From positions 62,001-126,000 of the IMG/VR virus record IMGVR_UViG_3300027899_000001: a stretch of DNA of 64,000 bases; one strand, 5' to 3'. The position numbers were made by a program, and so were the translations under genes. Position 1 is the first letter of the stretch; each line of letters starts with the position of its first letter. The notes beneath the pieces are model-generated. The model ran no database searches, was not told the DNA's origin, and saw only the letters and a list, made by a program, of their open reading frames with translations. This document shows positions 235 to 63,027 of this stretch, one piece after another.

Positions 235-284
235 AGAATGAATTACTTTTATTTATATATTCTTTATGTCTAAATTGAATTGAC

Positions 285-310
285 AAAAAACCCCCACTGA
301 GGCTGGGGGT
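285..310 (-). terminator. Intrinsic terminator ending the tmRNA transcript
   Basis: CCCCCA-GCCTCAG-TGGGGG followed by TTTTTT on the minus strand. Confidence 0.8.
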
Positions 311-334
311 AAATCTCCTACCAACGAGTGCTTC

Positions 335-370
335 TTAAGCAGCCATTTGTAATGCGTAACTATTTTCGCC
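335..370 (-). other. tmRNA tag reading frame (A)GENSYALQMAA*
   Basis: GGC GAA AAT AGT TAC GCA TTA CAA ATG GCT GCT TAA, preceded by GTAAAC. Stop codon lies in a TGCTT/AAGCA hairpin. Resembles Bacteroidota GENNYALAA-type tags. Confidence 0.8.
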
Positions 371-548
371 GTTTACTTGCGTGTTGAGACATTCATTATT
401 TCCCTTAGTATACAATCTAAACCAAATCATCCCCATTAAAAGCAATATCTCTTTTATAAAGATTTGTGGAGATGGTGGGATCCGACCCCACGTCTTGCAT
501 ACCTACTCTATAACTAGCTCTTGCGAGCATTCTCAATATCTTAAAGAA

Positions 549-556
549 CAAATATA
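549..556 (-). promoter_or_regulatory. Bacteroidota-type -7 element (TATATTTG) upstream of tmRNA
   Basis: Matches TAnnTTTG; lies just upstream of the predicted 5' end of the acceptor piece. Confidence 0.55.
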
Positions 557-5014: not shown

Positions 5015-5212
5015 TTATTATCATTATTAGTCATTTTAAAAACTTCCTATATGTACATTTATATAGCCTTCTTTTACTTTCTTTTGAAAAAAATCTGCAT
5101 AAATTTTTACAGAATCGCTTTCTCTACATATATGAAGGCGCCCTTCAGCCATTTCGTTTTCAAGAAATTTTTCAAAAGAACTTTTCTTTTTTCTAAATAT
5201 ACGCATTTTTAT

Positions 5213-5563
5213 TTATATATTATAGATCTTATTACTTGACACCGAAATTTTCTTTGATTTTGGCATATTTCCATATAATTTTCTCCATCCTTTTGCGAAA
5301 CCGTTTTTAATTATTTGTGTAAAATATGCGAATGCATTTTGAGATTTTGCCGGATCATATCCTCGCCAATATTGAAAACAATCCATAACTGCAAATGATA
5401 TACAATCTTCTCGATCTTCAGGATAAATATAGTTTAATTTAGTAGAAAATTTCTTTGCCATTAACATAAACATATCCAAAGCAATTGGAGTTAATTTATC
5501 AGCTTCTTTAGATTTTATTATTTCGTTTCGCAGGTCGGCATTCTTTACATGATGTAGTCCCAT
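5213..5563 (-). CDS. gp55: Late-transcription sigma factor, T4 gp55-like (short)
   Basis: EDREDCISFAVMDCFQYWRGYDPAKSQNAFAYFTQIIKNGF. Confidence 0.8.
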   Translation of the reverse strand: MGLHHVKNADLRNEIIKSKEADKLTPIALDMFMLMAKKFSTKLNYIYPEDREDCISFAVMDCFQYWRGYDPAKSQNAFAYFTQIIKNGFAKGWRKLYGNMPKSKKISVSSNKIYNI

Positions 5564-19565: not shown

Positions 19566-19898
19566 TTATTCGCTTATGTATATTTTTTCATCTGATCCTA
19601 TTGTGTACATTTCACCATTATTATCTAACAAATTTACTTCGCGTTGATTTTTTCTACCTTTAACTTCCTTTACTTTTATAGTTTGTGTTTTCCATTCATG
19701 TCCACGGTTTCCCCATTTATGCATTTTTCCAGTAACAGTTCTTCCAGTTAAATTATTATCTAAATAACGAAGCCAGTTTTTTCCTGCTTTGTCCATGATT
19801 TCTTCAAACACATAATCAAGATTTACGCCACCAATACCCATATCTGCTATTGGATCAGTTTGATCATCGAATTTTTCGTTAATAAGATGTGCTCTCAA
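19566..19898 (-). CDS. Tagged putative internal head protein (TTG start)
   Basis: MRAHLINEKFDDQTDPIADMGIG; late-promoter motif at 19908-19923. Confidence 0.75.
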   Translation of the reverse strand: MRAHLINEKFDDQTDPIADMGIGGVNLDYVFEEIMDKAGKNWLRYLDNNLTGRTVTGKMHKWGNRGHEWKTQTIKVKEVKGRKNQREVNLLDNNGEMYTIGSDEKIYISE

Positions 19899-19933
19899 AA
19901 TAATTAGTTTATTTTATATATTCAGCAAAGCAA

Positions 19934-19954
19934 AAGGAGAATGTTATTCTCCTT
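19934..19954 (-). terminator. Hairpin, probable intrinsic terminator for minus-strand transcripts
   Basis: AAGGAGAAT-GTT-ATTCTCCTT 9-bp stem; followed by TTGCTTTG on minus. Confidence 0.55.
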
Positions 19955-19971
19955 CGTTAAGTTTTTCAATG

Positions 19972-20053
19972 AATATATAAATAAAGAGGTAAGACTTTAG
20001 TAGAAGTCAGCTGACGATTTGGATAATCAGGTGTCCCTCTTTATTTATATATT
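19972..20053. other. Inverted-repeat-bounded structured element 1 (face-to-face late promoters around a two-hairpin core)
   Basis: Perfect 18-bp IR AATATATAAATAAAGAGG / CCTCTTTATTTATATATT enclosing TAA-[GACTT/AAGTC]-AG-[CTGA/TCAG]-GTGTC. Confidence 0.7.
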
Positions 20054-20079
20054 TTTACTTAAAATAAGATTTGGAAATC

Positions 20080-20979
20080 ATGAAAGAATTTAGAAAAACA
20101 GAAAATTGCTCTTTTATTTGCGAAGAATGCGGAAAAATATATGAAACTCTCAATGGATTAAGAGTACATGTTCAGCGTTCTCATACTACTAAGATATATC
20201 ATGATAAATGGTTAAAAGAAGATTTTGAGGGAAAATGTAAAACATGTGGAAACGAAACAAAATTTAAAGGAATATTGTCAGGATATTATAATTGTTGCTC
20301 TAAAAAATGTGTAGACACATATAGATATGAACAGAATAAAAAAACAAATTTAAAATTTTATGGAGTAGAAAATAATTATCAACGCGTAGATGTAAAAGAA
20401 AAAAACAAAAAACTTTGTAAAGAAAGATATGGGCACGAAAATCCTGCTCATGGAACAAACAAAGAAAAGGTTAAAAAAACTATGCTATCGCGATATAACT
20501 CTGAATATGCTTTTCAAAATAAAAATTGTAGAGAAAAATTTGAAAATACTATGTTATTAAAATATGGTCATATTTATCCTTTACAAAATACCGAAATTTT
20601 TATAAAAGCATCTAAAAGTAATATTAATGTAAACTCATTTAAAAATACAGATATATGGTATCAAGGATCCTATGAATTAGATTTTTTAGAAAAATATTAT
20701 AATATATTTCCAGATATTATCAGAGGGCCATCAATAAAATATATTTATAAAAACGAACAAAAAATTTATTATCCAGATTTTTTAATTCCATCATTAAATT
20801 TAATAGTGGAATGTAAAAATTCTTATTTATTAAAAAGAGATACAGAAATATTAAAAGAAAAGAAAAAGGCAATTATAAATAACGGATATAATTATATTAT
20901 AATTGTAAATAAAGATTATTCTGAATTTAATAATTTTTCTATAGATAAATCAGAAAATCCTGCATTTTTTTCTATTTGA
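20080..20979 (+). CDS. Free-standing endonuclease, family copy 2 (inverted orientation; likely start MKEFRK at 20080)
   Basis: CEECGKIY; YGVENNYQ; YQGSYELDFLEKYY...YYPDFLIPSLNLIVECK. Confidence 0.75.
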   Translation: MKEFRKTENCSFICEECGKIYETLNGLRVHVQRSHTTKIYHDKWLKEDFEGKCKTCGNETKFKGILSGYYNCCSKKCVDTYRYEQNKKTNLKFYGVENNYQRVDVKEKNKKLCKERYGHENPAHGTNKEKVKKTMLSRYNSEYAFQNKNCREKFENTMLLKYGHIYPLQNTEIFIKASKSNINVNSFKNTDIWYQGSYELDFLEKYYNIFPDIIRGPSIKYIYKNEQKIYYPDFLIPSLNLIVECKNSYLLKRDTEILKEKKKAIINNGYNYIIIVNKDYSEFNNFSIDKSENPAFFSI

Positions 20980-22619
20980 ATTTTATAATCAAAGTATTCT
21001 ATTGGTAATGCAGCATGATGTATTATAAATATATTCATATTCAATTCCTTAGTTGTATTTTTTAATACTCCTAACACATCATATATTTTATCATTGTCTA
21101 ATGAAGACAAAACTTCATCTAGCATAAATATGTTTAATCCAGGATATTTACGTTTTAACATTCTTATTATAGATATAAGCACTGCAAGATCAACAGATTT
21201 TTTCTCGCCCGTTGAGAGTGTATCTACTCCAATTTCAATTCCTAAATGATGTAATTCAGGTTCAAAATCTGAATTAAAAGATAAATTATAAGGAAAATGT
21301 AATTCGTGTAATGTAAATGATATTTCTCTATTAAGTGTAGGAAGATAACTTTCAAGAATTTTCTTTTTAATGCCAGCATCTGAATATAATTGTTCAAGAA
21401 TTGCAAGATATTTATATTCTTCATCAAATTTAACTTTATCTTCACTTTTAGATGTAAGAGTAGTAGTATTATCAGAAATTATATTTTGAATACTTGTAAA
21501 TTCTTGAGGCTTATCCATTTTTAATCTATCCATTTCTGATTGAATGGAATTATATGTAGATTGAACCTGAATAATAAAATTATTAATAGTCACAAGTCCT
21601 TGATTAATTTTTTGTAATGCTGATGTATATTTTCCTTCATCAGAATTTACGCCTATTAATTCTTCTTGTTTCTGTTTTAACTCTCCTTGAAGAGCTTCTT
21701 TTATTAAATTAAATCTTGAATCATTAAATGGAGTGGCACAAGTTGGACATTTTTCTTGACGAAATAAATCTAATTGAATATTAACATGCTGAATCTCATG
21801 TTGAATTTTCATTTTTTGTTGTTGAAAAACACTATATGAACGATTTATTTCATCTCGTTTTCCTTCGTATATTGTTTTCTTATTATAACCTTCTAAGAGT
21901 TTAGGTTTATATAATTCTAATTGTTTAGCTAAATTGGCAATTTTTTCTGTATTATCTTGAGTAACTTGTGTTTGAAGTTTTTGAAGTTCTTTAACTGCAA
22001 TATCTATGTTATTTTTAAGAGTCATTATTTCTCTATCAAAAAGATCCATATTTGTTTTAACATCTCTTAAATCTTTTTTAACAAGTTCGTTCATCTTATT
22101 AATAATTTCCATCGCAAATAACTTATCAATGATAATTCTCTTATCATGTGGAGTCATTGAGATAAAGGATTTAAAATCATTAATAGATAAAGAAATAATG
22201 TTCGAGAAGATATGATAGGGTAGTCCAGTAACCTCTAGATCTATATAATCTTGGTAATTTACAATTCCGGCTTTGCCAATATCATTATCATCATTTGTAT
22301 CGTCATCAATATCATTATTCTTAAATACTCTTAAATCTGATGGCGAAAAATTTCTTTCTATTGTTACAAATGTTTCAGGGTTTGTTTCATCAGTGCCTCT
22401 TATCCATCCATGTTTATTCAGACGATTTGCTATTTCATCTTTCTTAAATTTATCAAGTTTTCCATAATAAAGAACTTTAGGAAGATTAACAAAAAAAGAT
22501 TTTCCATTTCCATTTTTTCCAAGAACCATCCAAAGTCCGCCTTCATCGGGCAATTCAAGACTTTGTAATTTATTTCCAAAAGGACCAATATTTCTCCATT
22601 CTATTTTCTTTAATTTCAT
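20916..22619 (-). CDS. gp46: Recombination ATPase, T4 gp46/SbcC/Rad50-like
   Basis: GKNGNGKS Walker A, CPTC zinc hook, LSTGEK signature, LDEV Walker B. Confidence 0.9.
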   Translation of the reverse strand: MKLKKIEWRNIGPFGNKLQSLELPDEGGLWMVLGKNGNGKSFFVNLPKVLYYGKLDKFKKDEIANRLNKHGWIRGTDETNPETFVTIERNFSPSDLRVFKNNDIDDDTNDDNDIGKAGIVNYQDYIDLEVTGLPYHIFSNIISLSINDFKSFISMTPHDKRIIIDKLFAMEIINKMNELVKKDLRDVKTNMDLFDREIMTLKNNIDIAVKELQKLQTQVTQDNTEKIANLAKQLELYKPKLLEGYNKKTIYEGKRDEINRSYSVFQQQKMKIQHEIQHVNIQLDLFRQEKCPTCATPFNDSRFNLIKEALQGELKQKQEELIGVNSDEGKYTSALQKINQGLVTINNFIIQVQSTYNSIQSEMDRLKMDKPQEFTSIQNIISDNTTTLTSKSEDKVKFDEEYKYLAILEQLYSDAGIKKKILESYLPTLNREISFTLHELHFPYNLSFNSDFEPELHHLGIEIGVDTLSTGEKKSVDLAVLISIIRMLKRKYPGLNIFMLDEVLSSLDNDKIYDVLGVLKNTTKELNMNIFIIHHAALPIEYFDYKIQIEKNAGFSDLSIEKLLNSE

Positions 22620-29667: not shown

Positions 29668-29907
29668 GTCCTTTTTTTGCGATTCTTTGTAAGATTCTTC
29701 TTCTGCTTCATAACACTTCTCACACCTCTTATACGGTTTTCCTGTATTTTGATTATACATAATTTTCCAAGTATGTGGCTGTAAAGGCATATGATTATCT
29801 GGATGTCCGGCATATGTTGTTTGACATTTTTCACAACCTTTGCAATCTGGAAAACTATCAGTAGTCCATGCTATTGCTTCTCCACATTTACATCTTAATG
29901 TTCTCAT
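29662..29907 (-). CDS. Small Cys-rich Zn-finger protein
   Basis: CKCG, CKGCEKC, CEKC. Confidence 0.6.
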   Translation of the reverse strand: MRTLRCKCGEAIAWTTDSFPDCKGCEKCQTTYAGHPDNHMPLQPHTWKIMYNQNTGKPYKRCEKCYEAEEESYKESQKKDS

Positions 29908-30889
29908 ATTTTTTTATTTTTGTATAATCTTTATCAATGATAATTAAATATGTATAGCCTAATGCTTTAGTATATTTTTCTTTTTTCTTATTTTGTTTTT
30001 CAAATCTATTATAATAATATTTACTTTTACATTCAATTATTAGATTTAACGATGGAATATAAAAATCAGGAAAATATATTTTATTTTTATTTTCATATTT
30101 ATATTTGATTGCTGATCCATTTTGTATGTCAGGATATTTATCATAAAATTTTTCTAAAAAATCCAATTCATATGATCCACGATAATAAATATTTGTATTT
30201 TTAAAATTTTTAGCTTTAAGCCCACTTTTTTGTTGTTTTTCAAATATTTCTTTATTTTGCATTGGATTTTCGACATCATATTTTTTTAAACAACTATTTA
30301 TTTTATGAGTTTTAACAACATTTGATGAATTTGGAGATACTGTACCATATTTTTTTAAAGACGTTTCTTGCTTTTTGGTCTTTATTTTTTTATTTTTTAA
30401 AGGATGTTCACCATATAAATTGATCATAATTTCGTTTCCTTTTTCTCTAATTTTTTTATTACTTAATCCCCATTCGCAGCCATAATTTTTAAATGTTGTT
30501 TCTTTTGATTTTTTTCTATTTGTATAATATTCATCATTGTATTTTTGTTTTTTAATTTTTTTAATTTTATTTTTAATTTTTTTTGATTGAAATACATTTT
30601 TAACACCAAATTTTTTAAAAACTTCTTCTTCTGTTCTAATCTGATTCCATTTTTTTTCGCATTCTCCTTTACAACAAGTTTTATATCCTCCTGCTATATT
30701 ATTAAATACGGTTTCTTTATTGCATATTTTGCATAACCCCTCTTCATTTTCACGTATATATTTATCAAAATATTCTTTAGCTTTATGTTTTCTTACTATA
30801 TGATTTATTATACCATGTTTAGAAATAGATGTTAACCCGCATTCTTCACATATAAAAAAATTATTTTGATTTTGTTGAAACCTTTTCAT
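29888..30889 (-). CDS. Free-standing endonuclease, family copy 3
   Basis: CEECGL..H..RKH; KYDVENPMQ; YRGSYELDFLEKFY...YFPDFYIPSLNLIIECK; late promoter at 30901-30914. Confidence 0.75.
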   Translation of the reverse strand: MKRFQQNQNNFFICEECGLTSISKHGIINHIVRKHKAKEYFDKYIRENEEGLCKICNKETVFNNIAGGYKTCCKGECEKKWNQIRTEEEVFKKFGVKNVFQSKKIKNKIKKIKKQKYNDEYYTNRKKSKETTFKNYGCEWGLSNKKIREKGNEIMINLYGEHPLKNKKIKTKKQETSLKKYGTVSPNSSNVVKTHKINSCLKKYDVENPMQNKEIFEKQQKSGLKAKNFKNTNIYYRGSYELDFLEKFYDKYPDIQNGSAIKYKYENKNKIYFPDFYIPSLNLIIECKSKYYYNRFEKQNKKKEKYTKALGYTYLIIIDKDYTKIKKYENIKM

Positions 30890-35563: not shown

Positions 35564-35983
35564 TTAATCATATTTTTTATCTAATAAAATGTTATTTAAA
35601 TAATCTTTTATATCTGGATAATAATTAAAGTAATAATATCTATGAACAGTTTCTTCATATTGTTTTTTCGTTATTTGTAATTCTTTACAAATATTACCAA
35701 TTCTTTTTCGCTTTTTATACCAAATTATAAATGTGTAGATTGCTATCAATGCTAATAAAAATGCATAAAAAATGCTAGTTATGTATAGACAATACATGGG
35801 TAGTCCTAAAAGATGTGAACTTGCAGCCATTAAAAATGGAAAAAATAAACCAAAACAAGAAATTATAACTGGCCATATATTACGAGATAAACTTACTACT
35901 GAAATATATTTTATAAAAAATAATTCACATGAACTAGGAGAGAATTTTCTATATGCTTCTTCAAATTGTTTTTTAGTTATCAT
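35564..35983 (-). CDS. Hypothetical 2-TM membrane protein
   Basis: IWPVIISCFGLFFPFLMAA and YITSIFYAFLLALIAIYTFIIW. Confidence 0.6.
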   Translation of the reverse strand: MITKKQFEEAYRKFSPSSCELFFIKYISVVSLSRNIWPVIISCFGLFFPFLMAASSHLLGLPMYCLYITSIFYAFLLALIAIYTFIIWYKKRKRIGNICKELQITKKQYEETVHRYYYFNYYPDIKDYLNNILLDKKYD

Positions 35984-36025
35984 CTACAAAATACATACTT
36001 TTTATATTTATTCATGATTTTTTAT

Positions 36026-36111
36026 GAATATATAATAAAAGCAGTAATCTTTATCTGTATAATAAAGAAACCGAAGAGGGATCAACGGCTGTCCTGCTAA
36101 ATTATATATTC
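36026..36111. other. Inverted-repeat-bounded structured element 2
   Basis: GAATATATAAT..AGCAG / CTGCT..ATTATATATTC enclosing TAA-[TCTTTAT/ATAAAGA]-AA-[CCG/CGG]-CTGTC; same architecture as 19972-20053. Confidence 0.7.
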
Positions 36112-36131
36112 TTAAAATAATAGGGGGATTC

Positions 36132-36884
36132 ATGGAAAAGAAATTTAATTATGTTTATTTAACAACAAATCTTGTTAATGGTAATCAATATGTTGGTGAT
36201 CGATCTTGTAATTGTAATCCAGAAAATGATAAATATTTAGGTAGTGGTACATATTATAAAAACGCTGAAAAACTATACGGAAAAGTAAATTTTAATAAAC
36301 AAATACTTGAATGTTTTGATACACGTGAAAAAGCTTTTAATGCTCAAGAAAAATATATTAAACAATATAATACATTAGTTCCAAACGGATATAATATAGA
36401 TCCCGTTGGTGGGCATGGAACTTATGGCGGATATTTGTCTGAAGAAACAAAATTAAAAATAGGTAATTCAAATAAAGGAAAAATCCATACAGAAGAAACA
36501 AAAAATTTATGGAAAAAACAAAGAAAAGGAAAAAATAATGGCATGTATGGTAAAGGTTATTTAATTTCTAAAGAAAAAAATGGAAGATATAATGAACCAG
36601 TATCTTCTAAAACGAAAGAAAAAATAAGTAACTCTAAAAAAGGTAAAAATACATGGATGAAAGGAAAAAATCATTCAATAAAAACAAAAGAACAAATTAG
36701 TAAAACAAAATCAAAATTAAGTTTTGAACAAAAACAAGAAATTTTTAATTCAATTAAAAATCGTAATACTAATCAAACAATAGAAGATATAATAAAAATT
36801 TTAATTATTAAATTTAATGTGTCTAGAAATACTATTTATAGAGCATATAATTATATTTACTCAATTTCTTCATTATCTTCTTGA
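36132..36884 (+). CDS. GIY-YIG homing endonuclease with NUMOD3-like repeats (inverted orientation)
   Basis: YVYLTTNLVNGNQYVG, YLGSG, EKYI, GYN; GKIHTEETK repeats. Confidence 0.85.
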   Translation: MEKKFNYVYLTTNLVNGNQYVGDRSCNCNPENDKYLGSGTYYKNAEKLYGKVNFNKQILECFDTREKAFNAQEKYIKQYNTLVPNGYNIDPVGGHGTYGGYLSEETKLKIGNSNKGKIHTEETKNLWKKQRKGKNNGMYGKGYLISKEKNGRYNEPVSSKTKEKISNSKKGKNTWMKGKNHSIKTKEQISKTKSKLSFEQKQEIFNSIKNRNTNQTIEDIIKILIIKFNVSRNTIYRAYNYIYSISSLSS

Positions 36885-38317: not shown

Positions 38318-38609
38318 ATTCTTTCTTAAGTTTAAGATAACTTTCGTAACGTCTTTTCTTCATTTTTTCTTTAAAAAAGTTTTCCTCTTTTTTTCTTTTT
38401 TCAAATTCTTCATCAGTTTCTAAGAATTCTCTTTCAACTTCAAGAAACCAATGAGCATCCCAAGATTCATTTTCAGAATAAAATCCTTCATCAAATCCTG
38501 CACGTATTCTGTCTTCGGGTTGAAGTTCTATTGTTATTTCTTTATATAACACTGGACCGTCCCAGTTTTTAGTGCTGAATACGGTTTTAATTATTTTTTT
38601 CTTTTCCAT
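38307..38609 (-). CDS. Hypothetical protein (start MEKKK at 38609), possibly leaderless
   Basis: ATG lies 4 nt after a TATATTTA element. Confidence 0.6.
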   Translation of the reverse strand: MEKKKIIKTVFSTKNWDGPVLYKEITIELQPEDRIRAGFDEGFYSENESWDAHWFLEVEREFLETDEEFEKRKKEENFFKEKMKKRRYESYLKLKKEFDE

Positions 38610-38610
38610 A

Positions 38611-38660
38611 ATGTAAATATAATACAAATATTTGACAGAAAAAAATATTATGATAAAAAT
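38611..38660 (-). promoter_or_regulatory. Repeated early-promoter module
   Basis: plus-strand atgtaaatataa...tttgacagaaaaaaa shared with 57306 and 58127. Confidence 0.6.
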
Positions 38661-38666
38661 TTTTGA

Positions 38667-38906
38667 TTATTTAAGATCTTTTAAGATATTTGCGTAAGGA
38701 TCTATTTCTTTTACTTCTTCAGTTATTTCTTTTTCAAATCCTGTAAGTTCATTTTCATCTTTATCTTGATCTTTAGCTAAAAGTTTGTGAGTATCAACTT
38801 CTATTTCACCTCCTAAATCTGGTTCTAATTTAGTATTTTCATAGATATATTCACTTTTTGATGGATTATCTTCCCAGGGTCCCCAAATATTAAGTTTCTT
38901 TTTCAT
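38667..38906 (-). CDS. Hypothetical protein
   Basis: Operon-packed ORF. Confidence 0.5.
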   Translation of the reverse strand: MKKKLNIWGPWEDNPSKSEYIYENTKLEPDLGGEIEVDTHKLLAKDQDKDENELTGFEKEITEEVKEIDPYANILKDLK

Positions 38907-39848: not shown

Positions 39849-40877
39849 ATGAGTTTAGAATTAACAGGAAAATATGTATCTTCCACCTATCTTAATTTAG
39901 TGCAGCATGCCAGCGATAATAATTATTATGATGGCGCTGGTAATTTACTTACAATAGGAAGTGGAATTCAAGGAATTCAGGGAATTCAAGGAATTCAGGG
40001 AATACAGGGAAATGATGGAGCTCAAGGAATTCAGGGAACTCAAGGAATAATTGGAATTCAAGGAACTCAAGGCATACAAGGAATTGATGGTACTCAAGGA
40101 ACTCAAGGTACTCAAGGAATTCAGGGAATTCAGGGTATTCAAGGAATAAATGGAATACAAGGAACTCAAGGTATTCAAGGAATAGATGGGGCTCAAGGAA
40201 CTCAAGGTATACAAGGAATTCAAGGAATAGATGGAACTCAAGGAACTCAAGGGATTCAGGGAACTCAAGGAATTCAAGGAATAACGGGTATTCAAGGTAC
40301 TCAAGGTATTCAAGGAATTCAAGGAATAGATGGAACTCAAGGAACACAAGGTATTCAAGGAATTCAAGGTACTCAAGGTATTCAAGGAATACAAGGGACT
40401 CAAGGAACTCAAGGTATTCAAGGAATTGATGGTGCACAAGGAGCTCAAAGTATTCAAGGAATTCAGGGAATACAAGGAATACAAGGAACAAGCCTTCTTA
40501 ATATAGTTGATGACACTACTCCACAATTAGGAGGAGAATTAGATGCACAAGCCCATTCAATAGGATTTACTCAACAAACTATCACTTATGATGTAACTAC
40601 AACTACAGTTGATTGGAAATTAGGTAATAAAGCTTCGATTACAGCAACAGGAAATATAGGAACATTTGCTTTTACTAATCCTTCTTATGCCTGTAATTTA
40701 TTATTAAAATTCATTCATGATGGAGGAGGCAGAACTGTTACAACTTGGGATACTGATATTAAATGGGCAGGAGCAACTCCGCCTACTTTAAGCACAGGTT
40801 CTGGAAACATAGATATTTTAAGTTTTTACTTTGATGGCACCAATTATTACGGTATGGCATCATTAAATTTTGCATAA
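39849..40877 (+). CDS. Collagen-like (Gly-X-Gln) tail fibre protein
   Basis: About 58 G-X-Y triplets (mostly GIQ/GTQ) then a beta-rich domain ending DILSFYFDGTNYYG. Confidence 0.8.
   Translation: MSLELTGKYVSSTYLNLVQHASDNNYYDGAGNLLTIGSGIQGIQGIQGIQGIQGNDGAQGIQGTQGIIGIQGTQGIQGIDGTQGTQGTQGIQGIQGIQGINGIQGTQGIQGIDGAQGTQGIQGIQGIDGTQGTQGIQGTQGIQGITGIQGTQGIQGIQGIDGTQGTQGIQGIQGTQGIQGIQGTQGTQGIQGIDGAQGAQSIQGIQGIQGIQGTSLLNIVDDTTPQLGGELDAQAHSIGFTQQTITYDVTTTTVDWKLGNKASITATGNIGTFAFTNPSYACNLLLKFIHDGGGRTVTTWDTDIKWAGATPPTLSTGSGNIDILSFYFDGTNYYGMASLNFA
39963..40493 (+). repeat. Degenerate 9-bp tandem repeat (ggaattcaa/ggaactcaa) coding the collagen region
   Basis: Directly visible in sequence. Confidence 0.9.
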
Positions 40878-46265: not shown

Positions 46266-47228
46266 TTAGCTATTAAGTATAAATTTTGTATAATCTTTAT
46301 CGACAATCATTATATAATTAAAACCTTTAGAAATAGTAGCTTTTTGTTTTGCTTCTATAATTTTTTTATCTTTTTTTATAAGATATGAGTTTTTAATTTC
46401 AATTATAAGATTTAATGAAGGAATATAAAAATCAGGGAAATAAATTTTATTTTTATTATTATATCGATATTTAATCGAGGGCCCGTTTTTTAAATCTGGA
46501 TACATATTTAAAAATTTTTCAAGAAAATCTAATTCGTAAGAACCTCTATAATATATATCAATGTTTAAATATTTATGAGAATAATAAGCGCTTTTTTGTT
46601 GTTTTTCAAATATATTTTTAACTTGCCCAGGATATTCAACACCATATTTTTCTACATATATTTTTTTGATATCTTCTTTTATTTTTTTAGATTGAAATAC
46701 ATTATCTACACCCCATTTTTCTTTACAAGTTTTTTTTACTTTTTCTCTATTTGAATAATATTCATTTCCATATCTTTCTTTTTTTGTTTGTTTTGATTTT
46801 TCTTTTGATTTTTCTAATTGAAATGAATTTTCTACATCATAACGTTCTTTAAGTGTTTTTTTGCAGGTTTCCTGATTCCATCCATTGGGCACACATTTTA
46901 AAGAACAATATTTATTCGGCGCGCCTCTCGTAAAATTTACAGATTTTCCACAAGTTTTACACGTTGGCGTTCCGTATTTTTTAATATAATTTTTCTTTCT
47001 CCATTCTGGTCCTTTATGGCCTACTGCAAAATCATGAAAAATATTATCTCGATATTCGGGCATTTCATCACAATATCCGCATTTGCATTTTGGCGATATT
47101 CCATTTAATACATATTCTATATGATAATTCTTAGAAGATATATGATGGTGTTGTTTTAAATGATTATTAAATTTTCTTAAAGCTAAAAACTCTTCATTAC
47201 AAATTTGACATTTAATGTTTGATTTCAT
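46266..47228 (-). CDS. Free-standing endonuclease, family copy 4
   Basis: CQIC..H...HH; KYGVEYPGQ; YRGSYELDFLEKF...YFPDFYIPSLNLIIEIK; late promoter at 47230-47245. Confidence 0.75.
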   Translation of the reverse strand: MKSNIKCQICNEEFLALRKFNNHLKQHHHISSKNYHIEYVLNGISPKCKCGYCDEMPEYRDNIFHDFAVGHKGPEWRKKNYIKKYGTPTCKTCGKSVNFTRGAPNKYCSLKCVPNGWNQETCKKTLKERYDVENSFQLEKSKEKSKQTKKERYGNEYYSNREKVKKTCKEKWGVDNVFQSKKIKEDIKKIYVEKYGVEYPGQVKNIFEKQQKSAYYSHKYLNIDIYYRGSYELDFLEKFLNMYPDLKNGPSIKYRYNNKNKIYFPDFYIPSLNLIIEIKNSYLIKKDKKIIEAKQKATISKGFNYIMIVDKDYTKFILNS

Positions 47229-47304
47229 TTTTATTTTATATATTCATCTTAATTCAAAAATGTAATGAATGTGGTGTTAATTTTTTGTTAAGATTTTAAT
47301 TTTC

Positions 47305-51533: not shown

Positions 51534-53267
51534 TTATTCTTTTTTAAGAAGTAAAAAATCAGTTTTTTTCAAATCTTTAGCAAAAATTTCTTGTAATTTT
51601 TCATTTCTACATACTATTAAAATATGATTTTCTGAACAAATTAATTTTTCATTATTAATTTCTATTTCAATATATTTTTCTTTTTTTGTTTTTATTATTT
51701 TTTCGATAGTTTTATATTCATTGGTGTGTGTTAAAATTTCATCATTATAGGTTAAATCTTTAATTTTTTTAAATCCATCTTTTGTAATAATTAAATGGTC
51801 TTCATCAAGACAATCTTCATCTGTAGCAATTATTATTTTGTCATAAACTGGTAATTTATCTTTGCCGGGTTCTATTTCAAGAATGCTCATTATATCTAAC
51901 CATTCAGCATTTCCTGTTAAATCTGATAATTTTCTTGCATTTTTAACCTTTCCTTTAAGAGCATATACTGCGTCAGTTTCAGAATCTCTTGCTTGTTTTA
52001 CTGAACCTGCTGCTGAAAGTCCTTCAGTAATATATATGCATCCCTTGTATTTTGAAGCAGGACTAAATTTATCAGATATCTTTCTTTTCGATTGCTTCTG
52101 AGCCTTTCTAATCTTAACTAAATTTTCATTATGGAGTCTATCTTCTATAGATTTTTCGATGCTTCTTGCTATATCAGATTTACTCAAGAATCTTATTAAC
52201 TTACTATGAAAAGATTCTTTCATCAATTCTTCTATTTCTCCACGACCTGTTGCAAATTTTGTTTTATTTTGGTCTGCAAATCTCATTAATTGCGACGGAA
52301 GATTAAGAGATATAAGAGTTTCATAGAAATGGTGAGCTAAATTATACTTAAAATATTCATTACCCCAATCATTAACTACTTTCTGATGTATTCCTGTACA
52401 GTTAGATCCATTAACAAATGATAAAGAACAAGAATTTTCATATGCTTCCCAAAGATATATTGTCCCCATATTGTTAGTTACAGTTATATGATCTTTAGGA
52501 ATAAAATCTGTCGTTATATCTATATCAAATTGTTTTCCTTCTTTTATAAAATATCCTTTGAAATCTAATTTATTAATAATAGGATCGTTCTTTATTAAGA
52601 AGTATTTGAATGAAAGATAAGTTGTTATTAAATCTATATCCCATTTAAGATCTAGAAATATTTTCTTTGATGGAATAAAGGTTATTTTAGTTCCAAGTTT
52701 ATCTGAAGATTCTTTTTTTCTTATTTCTTCATTTACTACTACGAAATCATCCCATGTAAATTTTACATAATGAGTTTTATTAACAGTAGTTACTGCGAAT
52801 TTCTCAGATAAAATATTAGTTACGGCAGCACCTAAACCAAAAGTTCCAAGTATATTAGTTGATGTATCAGTAAAATTAGAACCTGCGTGAAGTTCTTCAA
52901 GAGCAGTTCTTACTACATTTTTCTTTGTTTTACTATGTTTTTTAGCTGCATCATGAAATCCTAAACCTTCATCTATCACAATTATTTCATTATTATCAAG
53001 ATTAACTTTAACTGTAACATTTTTCATTTTACCCTTACATCGTTTAGCTTCATCTAAAGAATTTTCTAAAATTTCATAAAATAATTGATAAAATCCAGGT
53101 GAATATTTTTTTTCTAATGAAATTAATTTATTATTAATAACAAGCGGATATTTACTATCTTCTATTTCAGATATTTGCCCAACATAAAGAGTAGGCCTTA
53201 ATCGTATAGCGGTAAAATTATCTAACGCTATTATTTCTTTTGAATTTCCTGTATTATTTTTTAACAT
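51534..53267 (-). CDS. Topoisomerase II B-type (gp39/GyrB-like) N-terminal part ending in a 92-aa IntN
   Basis: EILENSLDE, DEGLG, GTFGLGA (GHKL), TEGLSA, ALKGKV, IIIATDED|CLDEDH. Confidence 0.9.
   Translation of the reverse strand: MLKNNTGNSKEIIALDNFTAIRLRPTLYVGQISEIEDSKYPLVINNKLISLEKKYSPGFYQLFYEILENSLDEAKRCKGKMKNVTVKVNLDNNEIIVIDEGLGFHDAAKKHSKTKKNVVRTALEELHAGSNFTDTSTNILGTFGLGAAVTNILSEKFAVTTVNKTHYVKFTWDDFVVVNEEIRKKESSDKLGTKITFIPSKKIFLDLKWDIDLITTYLSFKYFLIKNDPIINKLDFKGYFIKEGKQFDIDITTDFIPKDHITVTNNMGTIYLWEAYENSCSLSFVNGSNCTGIHQKVVNDWGNEYFKYNLAHHFYETLISLNLPSQLMRFADQNKTKFATGRGEIEELMKESFHSKLIRFLSKSDIARSIEKSIEDRLHNENLVKIRKAQKQSKRKISDKFSPASKYKGCIYITEGLSAAGSVKQARDSETDAVYALKGKVKNARKLSDLTGNAEWLDIMSILEIEPGKDKLPVYDKIIIATDEDCLDEDHLIITKDGFKKIKDLTYNDEILTHTNEYKTIEKIIKTKKEKYIEIEINNEKLICSENHILIVCRNEKLQEIFAKDLKKTDFLLLKKE
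51537..51812 (-). mobile_element. IntN (92 aa) of a split intein
   Basis: CLDEDHLI block A; CSENH block B. Confidence 0.88.
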
Positions 53268-54198
53268 AATTTTCTATAAATTCTTTATAGTTTTTATTTA
53301 AGATAAGAATATAATTATATCCTAATTTTTTTGTTGCTTTTTCTTTTTCAAAAATTTCATTTTCATTCATTTTTAAGGTATAAGATCCTTTTATTTCTAT
53401 TACTAAATTTTCAGATGGTAGATAAAAATCAGAATGATATACTCTATTTTTTCCATCAAGGTTATATTTTATAGACGGCCCATTTTGCATATCATTAAAT
53501 AAAGTATAAAAATTTTCTAAAAAGTCAAATTCATATGACGCTTGATACGTTAAATTACTATCTTTATATTGATGTAATAGCATCCTAGTTTTAAATGCTT
53601 TATCATATATTCCTTTATCTTGTAAAGGATTTTCGACTCCATATTTTTTTAAATAATGTTGTTTTAAATTATTTTGAATAATTTTGCTAGAATATGGATT
53701 TTTTGTTCCATAATTTTTTTTACATGTTTTTTCTGCTTTTAATTTAACATCTTTATTAGCTAATGTACATGCAGTTCCATATTTTTTTATATTAGTATTT
53801 TCAAGTTTATCTCTAACTATTTTTGATTTATTTGGATTATCTACTCCATAATTTTCTTTCCACGTTTCTTTCATTTTATTTTTACAATCTTCTCTTTGAA
53901 AATTGTTTTCTACTCCATAAGTGTGTAATAATGTTTCTTTTCGAGTTTCATTTGCAATTTTTATACTATGATTATTACAACAACCTTTAATATATCCATA
54001 AGCTAAACTTTTAAACTTAGTTTGTTTATTACATATTTTACATAATTCTTCGTTATCTTCTTTTAACCATTTATCAAAATATATTTTAGTGTTATCGTGC
54101 TTTCGTTGAATATGTTTACTTAAAGACATTAAATTTTTACATATTTTTTGGCATTCTTCACAAATATAAAAATCATTTTCTTGTTTAAATTTTTTCAT
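53254..54198 (-). CDS. Free-standing endonuclease, family copy 5
   Basis: CEECQK..H..RKH; YGVENNFQ; YQASYEFDFLENFY...YHSDFYLPSENLVIEIK. Confidence 0.75.
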   Translation of the reverse strand: MKKFKQENDFYICEECQKICKNLMSLSKHIQRKHDNTKIYFDKWLKEDNEELCKICNKQTKFKSLAYGYIKGCCNNHSIKIANETRKETLLHTYGVENNFQREDCKNKMKETWKENYGVDNPNKSKIVRDKLENTNIKKYGTACTLANKDVKLKAEKTCKKNYGTKNPYSSKIIQNNLKQHYLKKYGVENPLQDKGIYDKAFKTRMLLHQYKDSNLTYQASYEFDFLENFYTLFNDMQNGPSIKYNLDGKNRVYHSDFYLPSENLVIEIKGSYTLKMNENEIFEKEKATKKLGYNYILILNKNYKEFIENYVKK

Positions 54199-55312: not shown

Positions 55313-56353
55313 TCATATATTTAGAAGTTTATTAAATTGTGCATACTGTTTATCTAAAATTAAAATATAGTTATATCCTTCTTTTTTTACTGCGTATTCT
55401 TTCTCTTTAATTTTTTCATCTTTTTTAAAAAAATAGTTGCTTTTTATTTCTATTATTAAGTTTAAATCGGAAATAAAAAAATCGGGAAAATAAACGTGAT
55501 TATTATTTTCATATACATAATTTATTTTTGGCCCATTTAATATATTAACTTTTTCATAATAATTTTCTAAAAAATCTAATTCATATGTACCTTGATAATT
55601 TAAACTAGTATCTTTATATTGGTTAATTTGTAATCCTGATTTGAACCATTTTAAGCGTATTTCATCACTTTGAAATACATTTTCTACTCCGTATCTTTCT
55701 AAACATGTTTGTTTTATTTTATTTCTTACATCTTTTGATTTAAAGGGTGTATCTGTTCCATAATGTTTTAAACAAGTTTGTCTTGATTTTTCTTTAACAC
55801 TTTTAGACTGTATATGATGTTTATTACCATAACGTATTAACGATGTATTTTCTCCTTTTTCTCTAACTTCTTTATTTTTCCAAGGATGATTTTTGCCATA
55901 TCTTTTTTTATTTGTTTCTTCTGTTTTATTTCTTATTTCTTTTGATTTAAATGGGGTATCAACTCCAAATTTTTTTATACAAGTTTGTTTTGATTTTTCT
56001 CTATTACTATAATTTTCATCGCCGTATTTTTTGTTTTTTGTTTCTTTGCATTTATTTTTTATTAAATCATTCTGAAATACGTTTTCTACTCCATAAATTT
56101 TTAAATTCGTTTCCTTTTTTGTTTTTTCTTTTAATATTTTTAAACATCTTTTGTTTTTACATGTTAATTGATAACCTTTTTGAATAGATATAAATACTGT
56201 TTCTTTTCCACAAATTTTACATATACCATCACTATTATTTTTTATATACTTATCATAATAATGTTTTCCATTATGGCATTTTCTAATATGATGACTAAAA
56301 GATCTCCATGAATATAAAATTTTATTACATTCTTTACATTTAAAGTTTTCCAT
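55313..56353 (-). CDS. Free-standing endonuclease, family copy 6
   Basis: CKEC..HH.RKCH; YGVENVFQ repeats; YQGTYELDFLENYY...YFPDFFISDLNLIIEIK. Confidence 0.75.
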   Translation of the reverse strand: MENFKCKECNKILYSWRSFSHHIRKCHNGKHYYDKYIKNNSDGICKICGKETVFISIQKGYQLTCKNKRCLKILKEKTKKETNLKIYGVENVFQNDLIKNKCKETKNKKYGDENYSNREKSKQTCIKKFGVDTPFKSKEIRNKTEETNKKRYGKNHPWKNKEVREKGENTSLIRYGNKHHIQSKSVKEKSRQTCLKHYGTDTPFKSKDVRNKIKQTCLERYGVENVFQSDEIRLKWFKSGLQINQYKDTSLNYQGTYELDFLENYYEKVNILNGPKINYVYENNNHVYFPDFFISDLNLIIEIKSNYFFKKDEKIKEKEYAVKKEGYNYILILDKQYAQFNKLLNI

Positions 56354-57273: not shown

Positions 57274-57305
57274 GACTTTATGTATTAATGTTTTAACTTC
57301 TATAG

Positions 57306-57368
57306 TGTAAATATAATACTTTAATTTGACAGAAAAAAATTATTTACAGATTATTTTCAAATTATTTT
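57306..57368 (-). promoter_or_regulatory. Repeated early-promoter module
   Basis: tgtaaatataa...tttgacagaaaaaaa..tttac.gattattttcaaattatttt, near-identical to 58127-58190. Confidence 0.65.
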
Positions 57369-58101: not shown

Positions 58102-58126
58102 ATCAATAATTTTAAGTTAATCTGTA

Positions 58127-58190
58127 ATGTAAATTTAATCATAATTTTTGACAGAAAAAAATCTTTTACGGATTATTTTCAAATTATTTT
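58127..58190 (-). promoter_or_regulatory. Repeated early-promoter module
   Basis: atgtaaatttaa...tttgacagaaaaaaa...gattattttcaaattatttt. Confidence 0.65.
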
Positions 58191-62539: not shown

Positions 62540-62565
62540 TGTTTATGTTTTTAACTTATTCTGTA

Positions 62566-62636
62566 ATGTAAATATAAACAAAATATCCGAAACAAAAAAA
62601 TTATTTCGGATATATTTTAACAATTTCTTAATTTTT
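62566..62636 (-). promoter_or_regulatory. Repeated early-promoter module with 10-bp inverted repeat
   Basis: atgtaaatataa; ATATCCGAAA/TTTCGGATAT (62583-62613); attttaacaatttcttaattttt shared with 63005-63027. Confidence 0.65.
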
Positions 62637-62937: not shown

Positions 62938-62956
62938 AATCTTATTTTTAATTACA

Positions 62957-63027
62957 ATGTAAATATAAAACAAAAATCCGACAAATAAAAATATTTATCG
63001 GATTATTTTAACAATTTCTTAATTTTT
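62957..63027 (-). promoter_or_regulatory. Repeated early-promoter module with inverted repeat
   Basis: atgtaaatataa; AATCCGAcAAATA/TATTTaTCGGATT; 23-nt block identical to 62614-62636. Confidence 0.65.

What the first reader, a model, noticed from the sequence alone, without database searches (positions are those of the whole stretch)
19972..20053. Element 1: perfect 18-bp inverted repeats made of late promoters enclosing a structured core
Seen: AATATATAAATAAAGAGG...CCTCTTTATTTATATATT around P1-UAA-[hairpin]-AG-[hairpin with GGAU in the loop]-GUGUC-P1'. Loop GGAUA can pair with UGUCC as a pseudoknot. Both ends read as the late-promoter motif pointing inward. A terminator at 19934-19954 would bound a minus-strand RNA of about 110 nt. 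The element lies just upstream of an endonuclease gene that is inverted relative to its neighbours. It matches no riboswitch or ribozyme core I recognise (hammerhead, twister and pistol checked by eye).
Basis: partly seen in the sequence, partly recalled or inferred. Interest (0 to 1): 0.8.

Follow-up and report, generated by a model that had tools for sequence, protein, structure and literature searches.

The report
Structured control element of backwards endonuclease cassettes
The 82-base inverted repeat belongs to a widespread, uncatalogued family of three-armed nucleic-acid structures that sit in front of homing-endonuclease genes inserted backwards into phage operons, and one of its loops carries an exact copy of that gene's own ribosome-binding site.

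Summary
There is a perfect 18-bp inverted repeat (19972-19989 / 20036-20053) around a 46-nt core. It is not a one-off: I found 105-108 distinct homologues in viral and metagenome contigs. A second copy lies in this window at 36023-36111. All fold as a three-way junction (P1, P2, P3), with 97.7% of cells paired and compensatory changes in 15 of 16 pairs. The junction bases U-A and UGUC are invariant.

[quoted passage not shown] That gene is almost always inverted relative to both neighbours. Alleles of the gp46 locus without the endonuclease also lack the element, so it belongs to the mobile cassette. The left arm is the phage's own promoter motif.

The P3 loop repeats the 7-11 nt just upstream of the endonuclease start codon, in more than 35 co-varying variants. 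The only complement of this sequence lies on the opposite strand. My best explanation, inferred and not shown, is cassette-specific sense/antisense control of endonuclease translation.

There is no match in Rfam, GenBank phages or cellular genomes. The nearby hairpin is the native gp46 terminator.

The parts
19959..19971 (+). Outer end of the mobile cassette (AAGTTTTTCAATG). A T-rich tract lies just outside the left arm and is conserved in the family.
   Evidence: Absent from endonuclease-free gp46 alleles, where the terminator follows the gp46 stop directly. T-run conserved in 66-80 of 105 elements.
19972..19989 (+). Left arm, the 5' strand of P1. It carries the phage promoter motif AATATATAAATAAA pointing right, towards the endonuclease gene. 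The inner 7 nt (19983-19989) form the covarying part of P1.
   Evidence: The AATATATA block is kept in 89-101 of 105 elements. The motif is over-represented in the window, 17 matches against 1.5 expected, with 16 on the gene strand.
19990..19992 (+). Junction J1/2 (UAA; the family has U-W-A, with U and A invariant).
   Evidence: Invariant columns.
19993..20008 (+). P2 hairpin (GACTTT / GAAGTC, loop AGTA).
   Evidence: All 6 pairs show compensatory changes across 40 elements.
20011..20030 (+). P3 hairpin (CTGA / TCAG) with a 12-nt loop.
   Evidence: All 3 modelled pairs covary.
20016..20023 (+). R1: GATTTGGA in the P3 loop, an exact copy of the sequence just upstream of the endonuclease start codon.
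   Evidence: (repeat D3).
20031..20035 (+). Junction J3/1 (GUGUC here; CUGUC in about 90% of the family; UGUC is invariant).
20036..20053 (-). Right arm, the 3' strand of P1. Read on the minus strand it is the same promoter motif, pointing left into the core.
   Evidence: The family right arms match AATATATA at 7-8 of 8 positions in 80 of 94 elements, but are less conserved by position than the left arms.
20060..20067 (+). Conserved TAAAATAA spacer between the right arm and R2. It is complementary to the T-run outside the left arm.
20068..20075 (+). R2: GATTTGGA at -12 to -5 of the ATG. This is the ribosome-binding region of the endonuclease gene.
20080..20979 (+). Free-standing homing endonuclease gene. 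It has an N-terminal C2H2-like zinc finger and DUF7487 with a PD-(D/E)xK-like C-terminal motif. It is inverted, and its 3' end overlaps the 3' end of the gp46-like gene by 64 nt.
   Evidence: Pfam DUF7487 E 1.2e-27; PHROG endonuclease and homing endonuclease families. Six paralogues in the window.
19934..19954 (-). Native intrinsic terminator of the gp46-like gene. It is not part of the cassette. At this locus it would end any minus-strand RNA that crosses the element, giving about 115 nt if the RNA starts at the right arm.
   Evidence: The same hairpin follows the gp46 stop in endonuclease-free alleles L219 and L221.
36023..36111 (+). Second copy of the element (80.7 bits with the family model). 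It lies upstream of an inverted GIY-YIG/NUMOD3 Seg-like endonuclease gene (36132-36884). R1 is AGAGGGAT at 36075-36082 and R2 is AGGGGGAT at 36122-36129.

Best explanation
What it is (shown): the 5' control module of a mobile homing-endonuclease cassette that has inserted in the opposite orientation to the surrounding phage genes. It consists of two inward-facing copies of the phage promoter motif, which form the arms (P1), around a core that folds as a three-way junction. The P3 loop repeats the endonuclease's own translation-initiation region.

How it most likely works (inferred): both strands of the core are transcribed. The plus strand, started at the left-arm promoter, is the leader of the endonuclease mRNA. 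The minus strand is made from the right-arm promoter, by transcription coming from the upstream host gene, or both. At this locus it ends at the gp46 terminator (19934-19954). It folds into the mirror-image junction, and its P3 loop is then the exact complement of the endonuclease's ribosome-binding region. That loop pairs with the ribosome-binding site, and with the identical loop in the mRNA leader. This keeps translation of the endonuclease low, in a way specific to each cassette. The logic resembles the antisense loops of IS10 or plasmid R1, which address only their own target.
For: Family and structure: 40 model hits of 56-95 bits and 105-108 distinct elements after the metagenome scan. 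97.7% of cells are paired, 15 of 16 pairs show compensatory changes, 0 of 500 shuffles reach this, and slid controls give 34-54%.

Cassette membership: the element is absent from endonuclease-free alleles of the same locus. It is always followed by an endonuclease gene of one of three families.

Inversion: the left neighbour is on the other strand in 94 of 95 cases and the right neighbour in 71 of 73. Within the DUF7487 set, 21 of 21 element-bearing genes are inverted and 0 of 19 co-oriented genes carry the element. In the window the figures are 2 of 2 inverted against 0 of 5 co-oriented.

Loop equals ribosome-binding region: the mean longest shared string is 7.4 nt, against 5.04 +/- 0.10 when partners are permuted (maximum 5.41 in 2000 permutations). 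There are 39 distinct shared strings, including ones without a Shine-Dalgarno core.

No complement of this string lies on the same strand within kilobases, so the opposite strand is the only base-pairing partner.

The same string type occurs with all three endonuclease families, so it does not reflect protein specificity. Elements within one phage carry different strings (and L023), as expected for regulators that must not cross-talk.

The stems are almost purely Watson-Crick: 617 Watson-Crick pairs, 7 G-U and 6 C-A. This is expected if both strands must fold.

Minus-strand transcription across the element must occur in many loci. In 30 of 94 the downstream host gene starts 25 nt or less beyond the left arm, and 28 of those have no promoter-like motif of their own.

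The right arm keeps a 7-8 of 8 match to the promoter core in 80 of 94 elements.

The predicted minus-strand RNA of this locus has the junction, a 27-nt spacer and then the terminator.
Against: No transcript data exist for either strand, so start sites, timing and RNA ends are all inferred. The right arm is less conserved than the left, so it may be mainly a pairing partner. Where host transcription reads through the whole cassette, it already produces a full antisense of the endonuclease mRNA; an extra anti-ribosome-binding-site loop then seems redundant. Three tests for a functional strand were uninformative: wobble pairs, GNRA loops, and the direction of mismatches between loop and ribosome-binding region. 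The invariant junction bases are not explained by this model. The promoter motif is called 'late' only because it contains the T4 late consensus TATAAATA.
Confidence: 0.38

Rival explanations
1. A purely cis-acting mRNA leader. The three-way junction at the 5' end of the endonuclease mRNA displays a mimic of the gene's own ribosome-binding site, followed 2-4 nt further away than in the real site by a start-like NUG in J3/1. Ribosomes bind the mimic. It acts either as a decoy that lowers initiation at the real site, or as a standby or coupling site.
For: The loop copy includes the Shine-Dalgarno-like part and the spacer. It is followed by CUG, AUG, GUG or UUG at a workable distance. The left-arm promoter is the best-conserved part. 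T4-type endonuclease genes are known to be held down at translation (PMC2988022).
Against: A decoy or standby site does not need to be identical to the real site, and variants without any Shine-Dalgarno core also co-vary. The NUG is CUG in about 90% of elements. The reading frame it opens has no conserved length or phase, with phases split 15:13:12. The Watson-Crick-only stems and the restriction to inverted genes are left unexplained. Predicted accessibility of the start region changes little with or without P1 (0.48-0.65).
Confidence: 0.2
2. A transcript-architecture module. The long hairpin (T-run, arm, branched core, arm, A-run) works on both strands as a processing site (for example for RNase III), a stabilising end structure or a partial bidirectional terminator. 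It insulates host-gene transcripts from the backwards cassette, and its two promoters restart transcription outward. On this view the loop identity is secondary.
For: The element is restricted to inverted cassettes. The stems are Watson-Crick only. The inverted repeat extends beyond any likely start site into a T-run and an A-run. The layout is an A-rich tract, a G+C-rich inner stem and a U-rich tract. The cassette sits between the gp46 stop and its terminator. The downstream host gene often starts 14-15 nt beyond the element.
Against: It does not explain the co-varying identity of loop and ribosome-binding region, or the invariant junction bases. A strong terminator would silence downstream host genes that have no promoter of their own. 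Most family members have an imperfect outer P1.
Confidence: 0.17
3. A DNA-level element. It would be a cruciform or single-strand hairpin used in homing or recombination, as a hairpin promoter, or as a miniature transposable element with terminal inverted repeats.
For: Near-absence of wobble pairs. Perfect terminal inverted repeats in this copy. It travels with a mobile gene.
Against: No target-site duplication flanks the arms. The element is never found away from an endonuclease gene. One repeat copy lies exactly on the ribosome-binding region, which points to RNA. Three unrelated nuclease families are unlikely to share a DNA signal.
Confidence: 0.08
4. A self-cleaving ribozyme or a ligand-sensing riboswitch in the endonuclease leader.
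For: It is a three-way junction with invariant unpaired bases (U-A, UGUC) and a size of about 60-85 nt.
Against: No Rfam family reaches E < 1 on either strand of either copy. The junction does not match the hammerhead core as known (CUGANGA, GAA). One loop is hypervariable and tracks the ribosome-binding site rather than being conserved. No expression platform overlaps the start site.
Confidence: 0.05

Closest known systems
Translational-control hairpins of T4-type homing endonuclease genes (I-TevI, I-TevII, I-TevIII, segB, Aeh1 mobE), reviewed in PMC2988022
   Same: A hairpin lies directly upstream of a phage homing endonuclease gene, with a late-type promoter embedded in its 5' arm. The presumed purpose, limiting endonuclease synthesis, is the same.
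   Different: Those hairpins sequester the ribosome-binding site and act on sense read-through transcripts of co-oriented genes. Here the site lies 15-27 nt outside the hairpin and is not sequestered. The genes are inverted. The structure is a branched junction whose loop copies the site instead of pairing with it.
Hairpin upstream of seg43(25), a segD-like gene of Aeromonas phage 25 (described in PMC2988022)
   Same: A very stable hairpin lies immediately upstream of the ribosome-binding site and does not sequester it. Its function is unknown.
   Different: I did not compare the sequences. No promoter inverted repeat, three-way junction or loop copy is reported for it.
Hairpins with TATAAATA in the stem upstream of Vsr-like and GIY-YIG endonuclease genes in 'fractured genes' of ocean metagenomes (Dassa et al. 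2009, PMC2677866)
   Same: The hairpins are in the 5' untranslated region of free-standing endonuclease genes of more than one family. The late-promoter motif and two mutually complementary conserved motifs lie on the stem. One hairpin was retained after endonuclease loss.
   Different: Those genes are co-oriented inside split host genes, and the hairpins were read as sequestering the ribosome-binding site. No branched core, covariation analysis or loop copy was reported. Their sequences (figure and supplement) were not available to me, so homology is untested.
Antisense control of mobile and selfish genes: IS10 RNA-OUT/RNA-IN and plasmid R1 CopA/CopT
   Same: Face-to-face promoters. A small stem-loop RNA whose loop is complementary to the target's translation-initiation region or leader. 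Loop sequences differ between co-resident elements, so each addresses only its own target.
   Different: In those systems the antisense gene overlaps the target site itself. Here the complementarity to the ribosome-binding site comes from a separate copy about 48 nt away, inside a three-way junction. No transcripts have been shown.
PeSL mobile promoter/stem-loop cassettes of T4-type phages (Arbiol et al. 2010; recalled from memory, not checked here)
   Same: Short promoter-plus-stem-loop modules that move with accessory genes in T4-type genomes.
   Different: PeSLs carry early promoters and simple stem-loops, and they are not tied to endonuclease genes.

Membership tests
T4-type RBS-sequestering hairpin with embedded late promoter | Late-type promoter inside the 5' arm of the hairpin | tested here: met
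   The left arm carries AATATATAAATAAA, which contains TATAAATA. The motif occurs 17 times against 1.5 expected in the window, 16 of them on the gene strand. Timing was not tested.
T4-type RBS-sequestering hairpin with embedded late promoter | The hairpin pairs with the Shine-Dalgarno sequence or start codon | tested here: not met
   R2 and the ATG lie 15-27 nt 3' of the right arm. Mean unpaired probability of the start region is 0.48-0.65 for all 5' ends tried.
T4-type RBS-sequestering hairpin with embedded late promoter | Gene co-oriented with the upstream operon, so that sense read-through RNA carries the whole hairpin | tested here: not met
   The left neighbour is on the opposite strand in 94 of 95 elements.
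Dassa 2009 endonuclease 5' UTR hairpins | Hairpin upstream of the start codon with TATAAATA and two complementary conserved motifs on the stem | tested here: met
   This matches the description in PMC2677866 section 14.
Dassa 2009 endonuclease 5' UTR hairpins | Sequence homology to their motifs 1 and 2 | not testable with these tools
   The figure and supplement are not held.
Known self-cleaving ribozymes and riboswitches (Rfam 15) | Match to a curated covariance model | tested here: not met
   No hit at gathering score in the window apart from a tmRNA. The best local hits have E 1.2-8 and are microRNA or sRNA models.
Cis-encoded antisense RNA control (IS10 / R1 type) | Convergent promoters giving overlapping sense and antisense RNAs | tested here: inconclusive
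   Promoter motifs are present on both arms, but the right arm is less conserved and there are no transcript data.
Cis-encoded antisense RNA control (IS10 / R1 type) | Antisense stem-loop whose loop is complementary to the target's initiation region | tested here: met
   Met at sequence level. The minus-strand P3 loop is the complement of R2 in essentially all elements.
Miniature inverted-repeat transposable element | Target-site duplication and dispersed copies independent of any one gene | tested here: not met
   No duplication at the arm ends. Every copy precedes an endonuclease gene.
Bidirectional intrinsic terminator | A-tract, G+C-rich hairpin and T-tract placed between convergent genes | tested here: inconclusive
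   The tract and stem layout is present. However, the element lies between divergent genes, its hairpin is branched, and host genes often start 14-15 nt beyond it.

The most novel reading that the evidence does not exclude
Each backwards-inserted endonuclease cassette carries its own programmable RNA 'address'. This is a three-way-junction RNA whose P3 loop is rewritten in step with the cassette's ribosome-binding site. Many cassettes in one phage genome would then each be regulated by their own orthogonal sense/antisense pair. That would be a new, modular class of phage RNA regulators dedicated to selfish nuclease genes. A still more exotic reading is not excluded. The two identical 7-11-nt strings are about the length of a transcription RNA:DNA hybrid and lie 43-53 nt apart. 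They could be take-off and landing sites for a polymerase or ribosome skip over the right arm.
Probability: 0.3. Interest if true: 0.85.

Novelty: new variant of a known kind. Interest (0 to 1): 0.7.

Why it matters
How free-standing homing endonuclease genes live inside dense phage operons without harming them is an open question. For genes inserted backwards (T4 segD is the textbook case) nothing is known about their control. This family gives that question a concrete and testable object. It is a covariation-proven structure with more than 100 natural variants. It is shared by three unrelated nuclease families. Its variable loop tracks the ribosome-binding site, so compensatory-mutation experiments are already laid out by nature. 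If the loop acts by base pairing, it is a compact, naturally orthogonal set of translational regulators. It also gives a sequence signature for finding inverted endonuclease cassettes in metagenomes, and it is a candidate new RNA family for Rfam.

Tried and rejected
- Sequence searches for a second copy inside the window found nothing: the core with 3 mismatches, the arm motif, and inward-facing TATAAATA pairs. The second copy differs too much. It was found by listing promoter motifs and with the covariance model.
- The exact arm pattern in viral contigs returned only the source phage.
- A single-protein search for related loci returned only the source phage. An alignment of the six paralogues was needed.
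- GenBank phages gave no match to either element or to the locus.
- The pattern scan of one genome for each of 185,579 bacterial and archaeal species gave one hit, which the model does not confirm.
- Strand tests were uninformative: wobble against C-A counts (7 against 6), GNRA loops in P2, and direction of mismatches between loop and ribosome-binding region (4 cases).
- No complement of the repeated string lies on the same strand. An alternative-pairing switch within the mRNA is therefore rejected.
- A small reading frame from the NUG in J3/1 has no conserved length or phase, so it is rejected as a conserved coding feature.
- Sequestration of the start region by the freed right arm gives only a weak effect.
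- A structure-database search with the endonuclease family found only the zinc finger.

Full report
**1. The observation**

The window is part of a 405-kb, roughly 28% G+C uncultured phage contig (IMGVR_UViG_3300027899_000001). At 19972-19989 and 20036-20053 there are two 18-nt arms that are 100% complementary, with 46 nt between them. No other perfect spaced inverted repeat of this length occurs in the window.

Both strands fold much better than dinucleotide shuffles. The z-scores are -4.9 and -5.6, and 0 of 200 shuffles reach either energy.

The element lies between two genes:
- a small minus-strand gene (19566-19898);
- a plus-strand gene (20080-20979) that matches Pfam DUF7487 (E 1.2e-27) and PHROG endonuclease and homing-endonuclease families, and has an N-terminal zinc finger.

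The plus-strand gene is inverted relative to its neighbours. Its 3' end overlaps the 3' end of a gp46/SbcC-like gene (20916-22619, minus strand; PHROG 77, E 1.3e-65) by 64 nt.

**2. It is a family**

Exact copies exist only in the source phage. I aligned the six DUF7487 paralogues of the window and used the alignment to fetch 79 related endonuclease loci. Several of these carry a recognisably similar element directly upstream of the gene.

Further searches gave:
- a pattern built from the conserved parts: 33 stretches in viral contigs;
- the same pattern in metagenome contigs: 103 stretches;
- after removing duplicates: 105-108 distinct elements.

A covariance model built from 35 sequences scores 40 elements at 56-95 bits. 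In the window it finds exactly two: this one (78.5 bits) and a second at 36023-36111 (80.7 bits). A third copy lies in the same phage just beyond the window end (L023). A contig that appears to be another assembly of the same phage carries a fourth (L032).

Nothing similar turned up elsewhere:
- Rfam 15 has no match;
- 50,697 GenBank phage records have no match;
- the scan of one genome for each of 185,579 bacterial and archaeal species gave a single pattern hit, which the model does not confirm.

**3. Structure**

RNAalifold predicts a three-way junction, and 13 of its 16 pairs show compensatory changes. On the model-based alignment of 40 elements:
- 97.7% of cells form standard pairs;
- 15 of 16 pairs show changes on both sides;
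- no shuffle out of 500 reaches the observed pairing or covariation score;
- sliding the partners by 1-3 columns drops pairing to 34-54%.

That alignment was fitted to the model, which favours the structure. The independent MAFFT/RNAalifold result agrees with it.

The consensus, in order, is:
- promoter-like arm ending in AAAG-NNG;
- U-W-A;
- P2 (6-9 bp, variable loop);
- A or AA;
- P3 (3-5 bp, loop of 9-14 nt);
- (C)UGUC;
- CNN-CUUU and the rest of the right arm.

U and A of the first junction and UGUC of the last are invariant. The perfect 18-bp P1 of this copy is the extreme case. In most members only the inner 7 bp pair perfectly.

The stems are almost purely Watson-Crick: 617 Watson-Crick pairs, 7 G-U and 6 C-A. 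There is therefore no sign that only one strand needs to fold.

**4. Context**

[quoted passage not shown] Three unrelated kinds occur:
- the zinc-finger/DUF7487 type;
- the GIY-YIG Seg-like type (the window's second copy; NUMOD3 E 8.7e-16, with Seg-like relatives in T4-type phages);
- an HNH-like type (I assigned the types other than the window's own genes from N-terminal motifs only).

*Orientation.* Using a crude ORF-based neighbour call, the left neighbour is on the opposite strand in 94 of 95 cases and the right neighbour in 71 of 73. In the DUF7487 set, all 21 element-bearing genes are inverted relative to both neighbours. None of the 19 co-oriented genes has the element. In the window, the two inverted endonuclease genes have it and the five co-oriented ones do not. 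These counts include related sequences and are not independent.

*Cassette boundaries.* Relatives whose gp46 is 74-80% identical lack both the endonuclease gene and the element. In them, the gp46 stop codon is followed at once by three things:
- a terminator hairpin;
- a promoter motif;
- the TTG-start small gene.

In the window the same terminator (19934-19954), promoter (19908-19922) and small gene are present. About 1 kb has been inserted between gp46 and its terminator, and it rewrites the last gp46 codons. The element is therefore part of the mobile cassette, whose outer end is near 19959.

**5. The arms as promoters**

The motif AATATATAAA(A)TAAA occurs 17 times in the window against 1.5 expected. 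Sixteen of these are on the strand that carries nearly all genes, usually 10-30 nt before a start codon. It contains the T4 late-promoter consensus TATAAATA (established knowledge); I did not test timing.

The left arm keeps this motif almost invariantly, at 89-101 of 105 per position. The right arm is less conserved by position. With a small shift allowed, it still matches the 8-nt core at 7-8 positions in 80 of 94 elements. A right-arm variant (GAATAAATAT..) also occurs as an apparent promoter of a host gene at 35998-36013.

In 30 of 94 loci the downstream host gene starts 25 nt or less (most often 14-15 nt) beyond the left arm, and 28 of these have no promoter-like motif of their own. Minus-strand RNA must therefore cross or start within the element in those loci.

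**6. The loop copies the ribosome-binding region**

In this element GATTTGGA occurs in the P3 loop (20016-20023) and again at -12 to -5 of the ATG (20068-20075). The same holds across the family, with different strings. Examples are AAGGTTAA, AGAGTTAA, ACGATTAA, ATCGGT, AGAGGGA, AGAGAGA, GGATAGA, AAGGAAAGA, AGATAGAC and AAGGACGT.

The numbers are:
- the mean longest shared string between a loop region and its own start region is 7.4 nt;
- with permuted partners it is 5.04 +/- 0.10, with a maximum of 5.41 in 2000 permutations. This test is conservative, because related elements share strings;
- there are 39 distinct shared strings;
- the two copies are 43-53 nt apart.

Three further points bear on interpretation:
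- some variants have no Shine-Dalgarno core, so pairing with 16S rRNA alone cannot explain the match;
- the same string type is found with all three nuclease families, so it is not a protein operator;
- elements of one phage carry different strings (and L023).

No complement of the string lies on the same strand within the fetched kilobases. The only complementary sequence is the opposite strand of the loop and of the start region.

**7. Mechanism**

*Shown:* the structure, the cassette membership, the association with inversion, the promoter motif, and the identity of loop and start region.

*Inferred:* that both strands are transcribed, and that the minus-strand copy acts on the endonuclease mRNA. 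Its P3 loop is the exact complement of the endonuclease's initiation region. I propose that it pairs with that region, and with the identical loop of the mRNA leader, to limit translation in a cassette-specific way.

This reading accounts for four features:
- the identity of arbitrary strings;
- their diversity within one genome;
- the Watson-Crick-only stems;
- the restriction to inverted cassettes, where host transcription supplies the opposite strand.

For this locus the predicted minus-strand RNA has the junction, a 27-nt spacer and then the gp46 terminator, about 115 nt in all. I give this explanation a probability of about 0.4.

Its weak points are:
- there are no transcript data;
- the right arm is less conserved than the left;
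- the extra loop is redundant wherever a full antisense RNA already exists;
- the invariant junction bases remain unexplained.

*Rivals:*
- **Sense-strand mimic.** The loop acts on ribosomes as a mimic of the ribosome-binding site. This is plausible, since a start-like NUG follows the loop. But identity is not needed for that role, and the small frame is not conserved.
- **Architectural role.** The element serves as a processing site, end structure or terminator on both strands. This fits the context but not the loop.
- **DNA-level role.** No target-site duplication is present, and the element is never found away from an endonuclease gene.
- **Ribozyme or riboswitch.** No model match and no expression platform.

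**8. Comparison with what is known**

T4-type endonuclease genes are known to be controlled by hairpins that hide the ribosome-binding site in read-through RNA, with a late promoter inside the hairpin (PMC2988022). Here the promoter is inside the arm, but the site is not hidden and the genes are inverted. Two defining features of that class are therefore not met.

The same review describes an unexplained hairpin just upstream of, but not covering, the ribosome-binding site of seg43(25). It also notes that nothing is known about expression of the inverted segD.

Dassa et al. 2009 (PMC2677866) reported hairpins with TATAAATA and complementary motifs on the stem upstream of Vsr-like and GIY-YIG endonuclease genes in ocean metagenomes. 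Those genes are co-oriented, and neither a branched core nor the loop copy was described.

The closest functional analogues are the antisense systems of IS10 and plasmid R1.

**9. Verdict**

The element is a member of a large family that is not in Rfam and, as far as my searches of the literature show, is undescribed in this form. I class it as a new variant of a known kind, namely endonuclease 5' control hairpins with an embedded promoter. Its new and testable feature is a loop that tracks the ribosome-binding site.

Noticed in passing
window 244-556 (-): A phage-encoded permuted tmRNA gene (Rfam RF04321, 64.5 bits, E 3.7e-10). ARAGORN predicts the tag peptide GENSYALQMAA.
   Followed up: no
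window 11.9-19.9 kb, 28.6 kb, 32.5-33.1 kb (-): At least 15 paralogous small genes share a conserved N-terminus (roughly MKLVKEHL.EKF.E.SDPI.DMGIG). No Pfam or PHROG match for those tested. The gene next to the element (19566-19898) belongs to this family and starts with TTG in both the endonuclease-bearing and endonuclease-free alleles.
   Followed up: partly
window 10643-11524, 20080-20979, 29888-30889, 36132-36884, 46266-47228, 53254-54198, 55313-56353: Seven free-standing homing endonuclease genes lie in 64 kb: six DUF7487 paralogues (42-44% identical to the first) and one GIY-YIG. More copies occur elsewhere in the 405-kb contig. This is an unusually heavy load.
   Followed up: partly
window 20916-20979: The endonuclease gene and the gp46-like gene overlap tail to tail by 64 nt. 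The cassette replaces the last native gp46 codons, as seen by comparison with endonuclease-free alleles L219 and L221. Tail-to-tail overlaps of 3-66 nt recur at most element-bearing loci.
   Followed up: partly
window 47228-47245, 5204-5221 and others (-): The promoter motif often ends only 4-8 nt before the ATG, with no Shine-Dalgarno sequence. These genes may be expressed from leaderless or near-leaderless mRNAs.
   Followed up: no
window 38605-38674, 57299-57368, 58121-58190, 62560-62629, 62951-63020: A second family of roughly 70-nt intergenic repeats (TGTAAATATAAT .. TTTGACAGAAAAAAAT ..). Similar sequences precede some endonuclease genes that lack the element in other contigs (L014, L016, L036, L048, L078). 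This is possibly another promoter class.
   Followed up: no
window 39891-40400, within ORF 39849-40877 (+): A long run of 9-nt periodic repeats (49 overlapping copies), consistent with a collagen-like Gly-X-Y protein. It is followed by an 1187-aa ORF on the same, minority strand.
   Followed up: no
window 35998-36013 (-): Ten nt outside the left arm of the second element lies a lone sequence identical to the common right-arm variant (GAATAAATATAAAAAG). It is placed as the promoter of the host gene 35564-35983.
   Followed up: partly
L093 419-504 (-): An element with no intact endonuclease gene downstream (stop after two codons). It has a G-U in P1, and an insertion separates its loop string from the start-region string. 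It looks like a decaying copy after endonuclease loss.
   Followed up: partly
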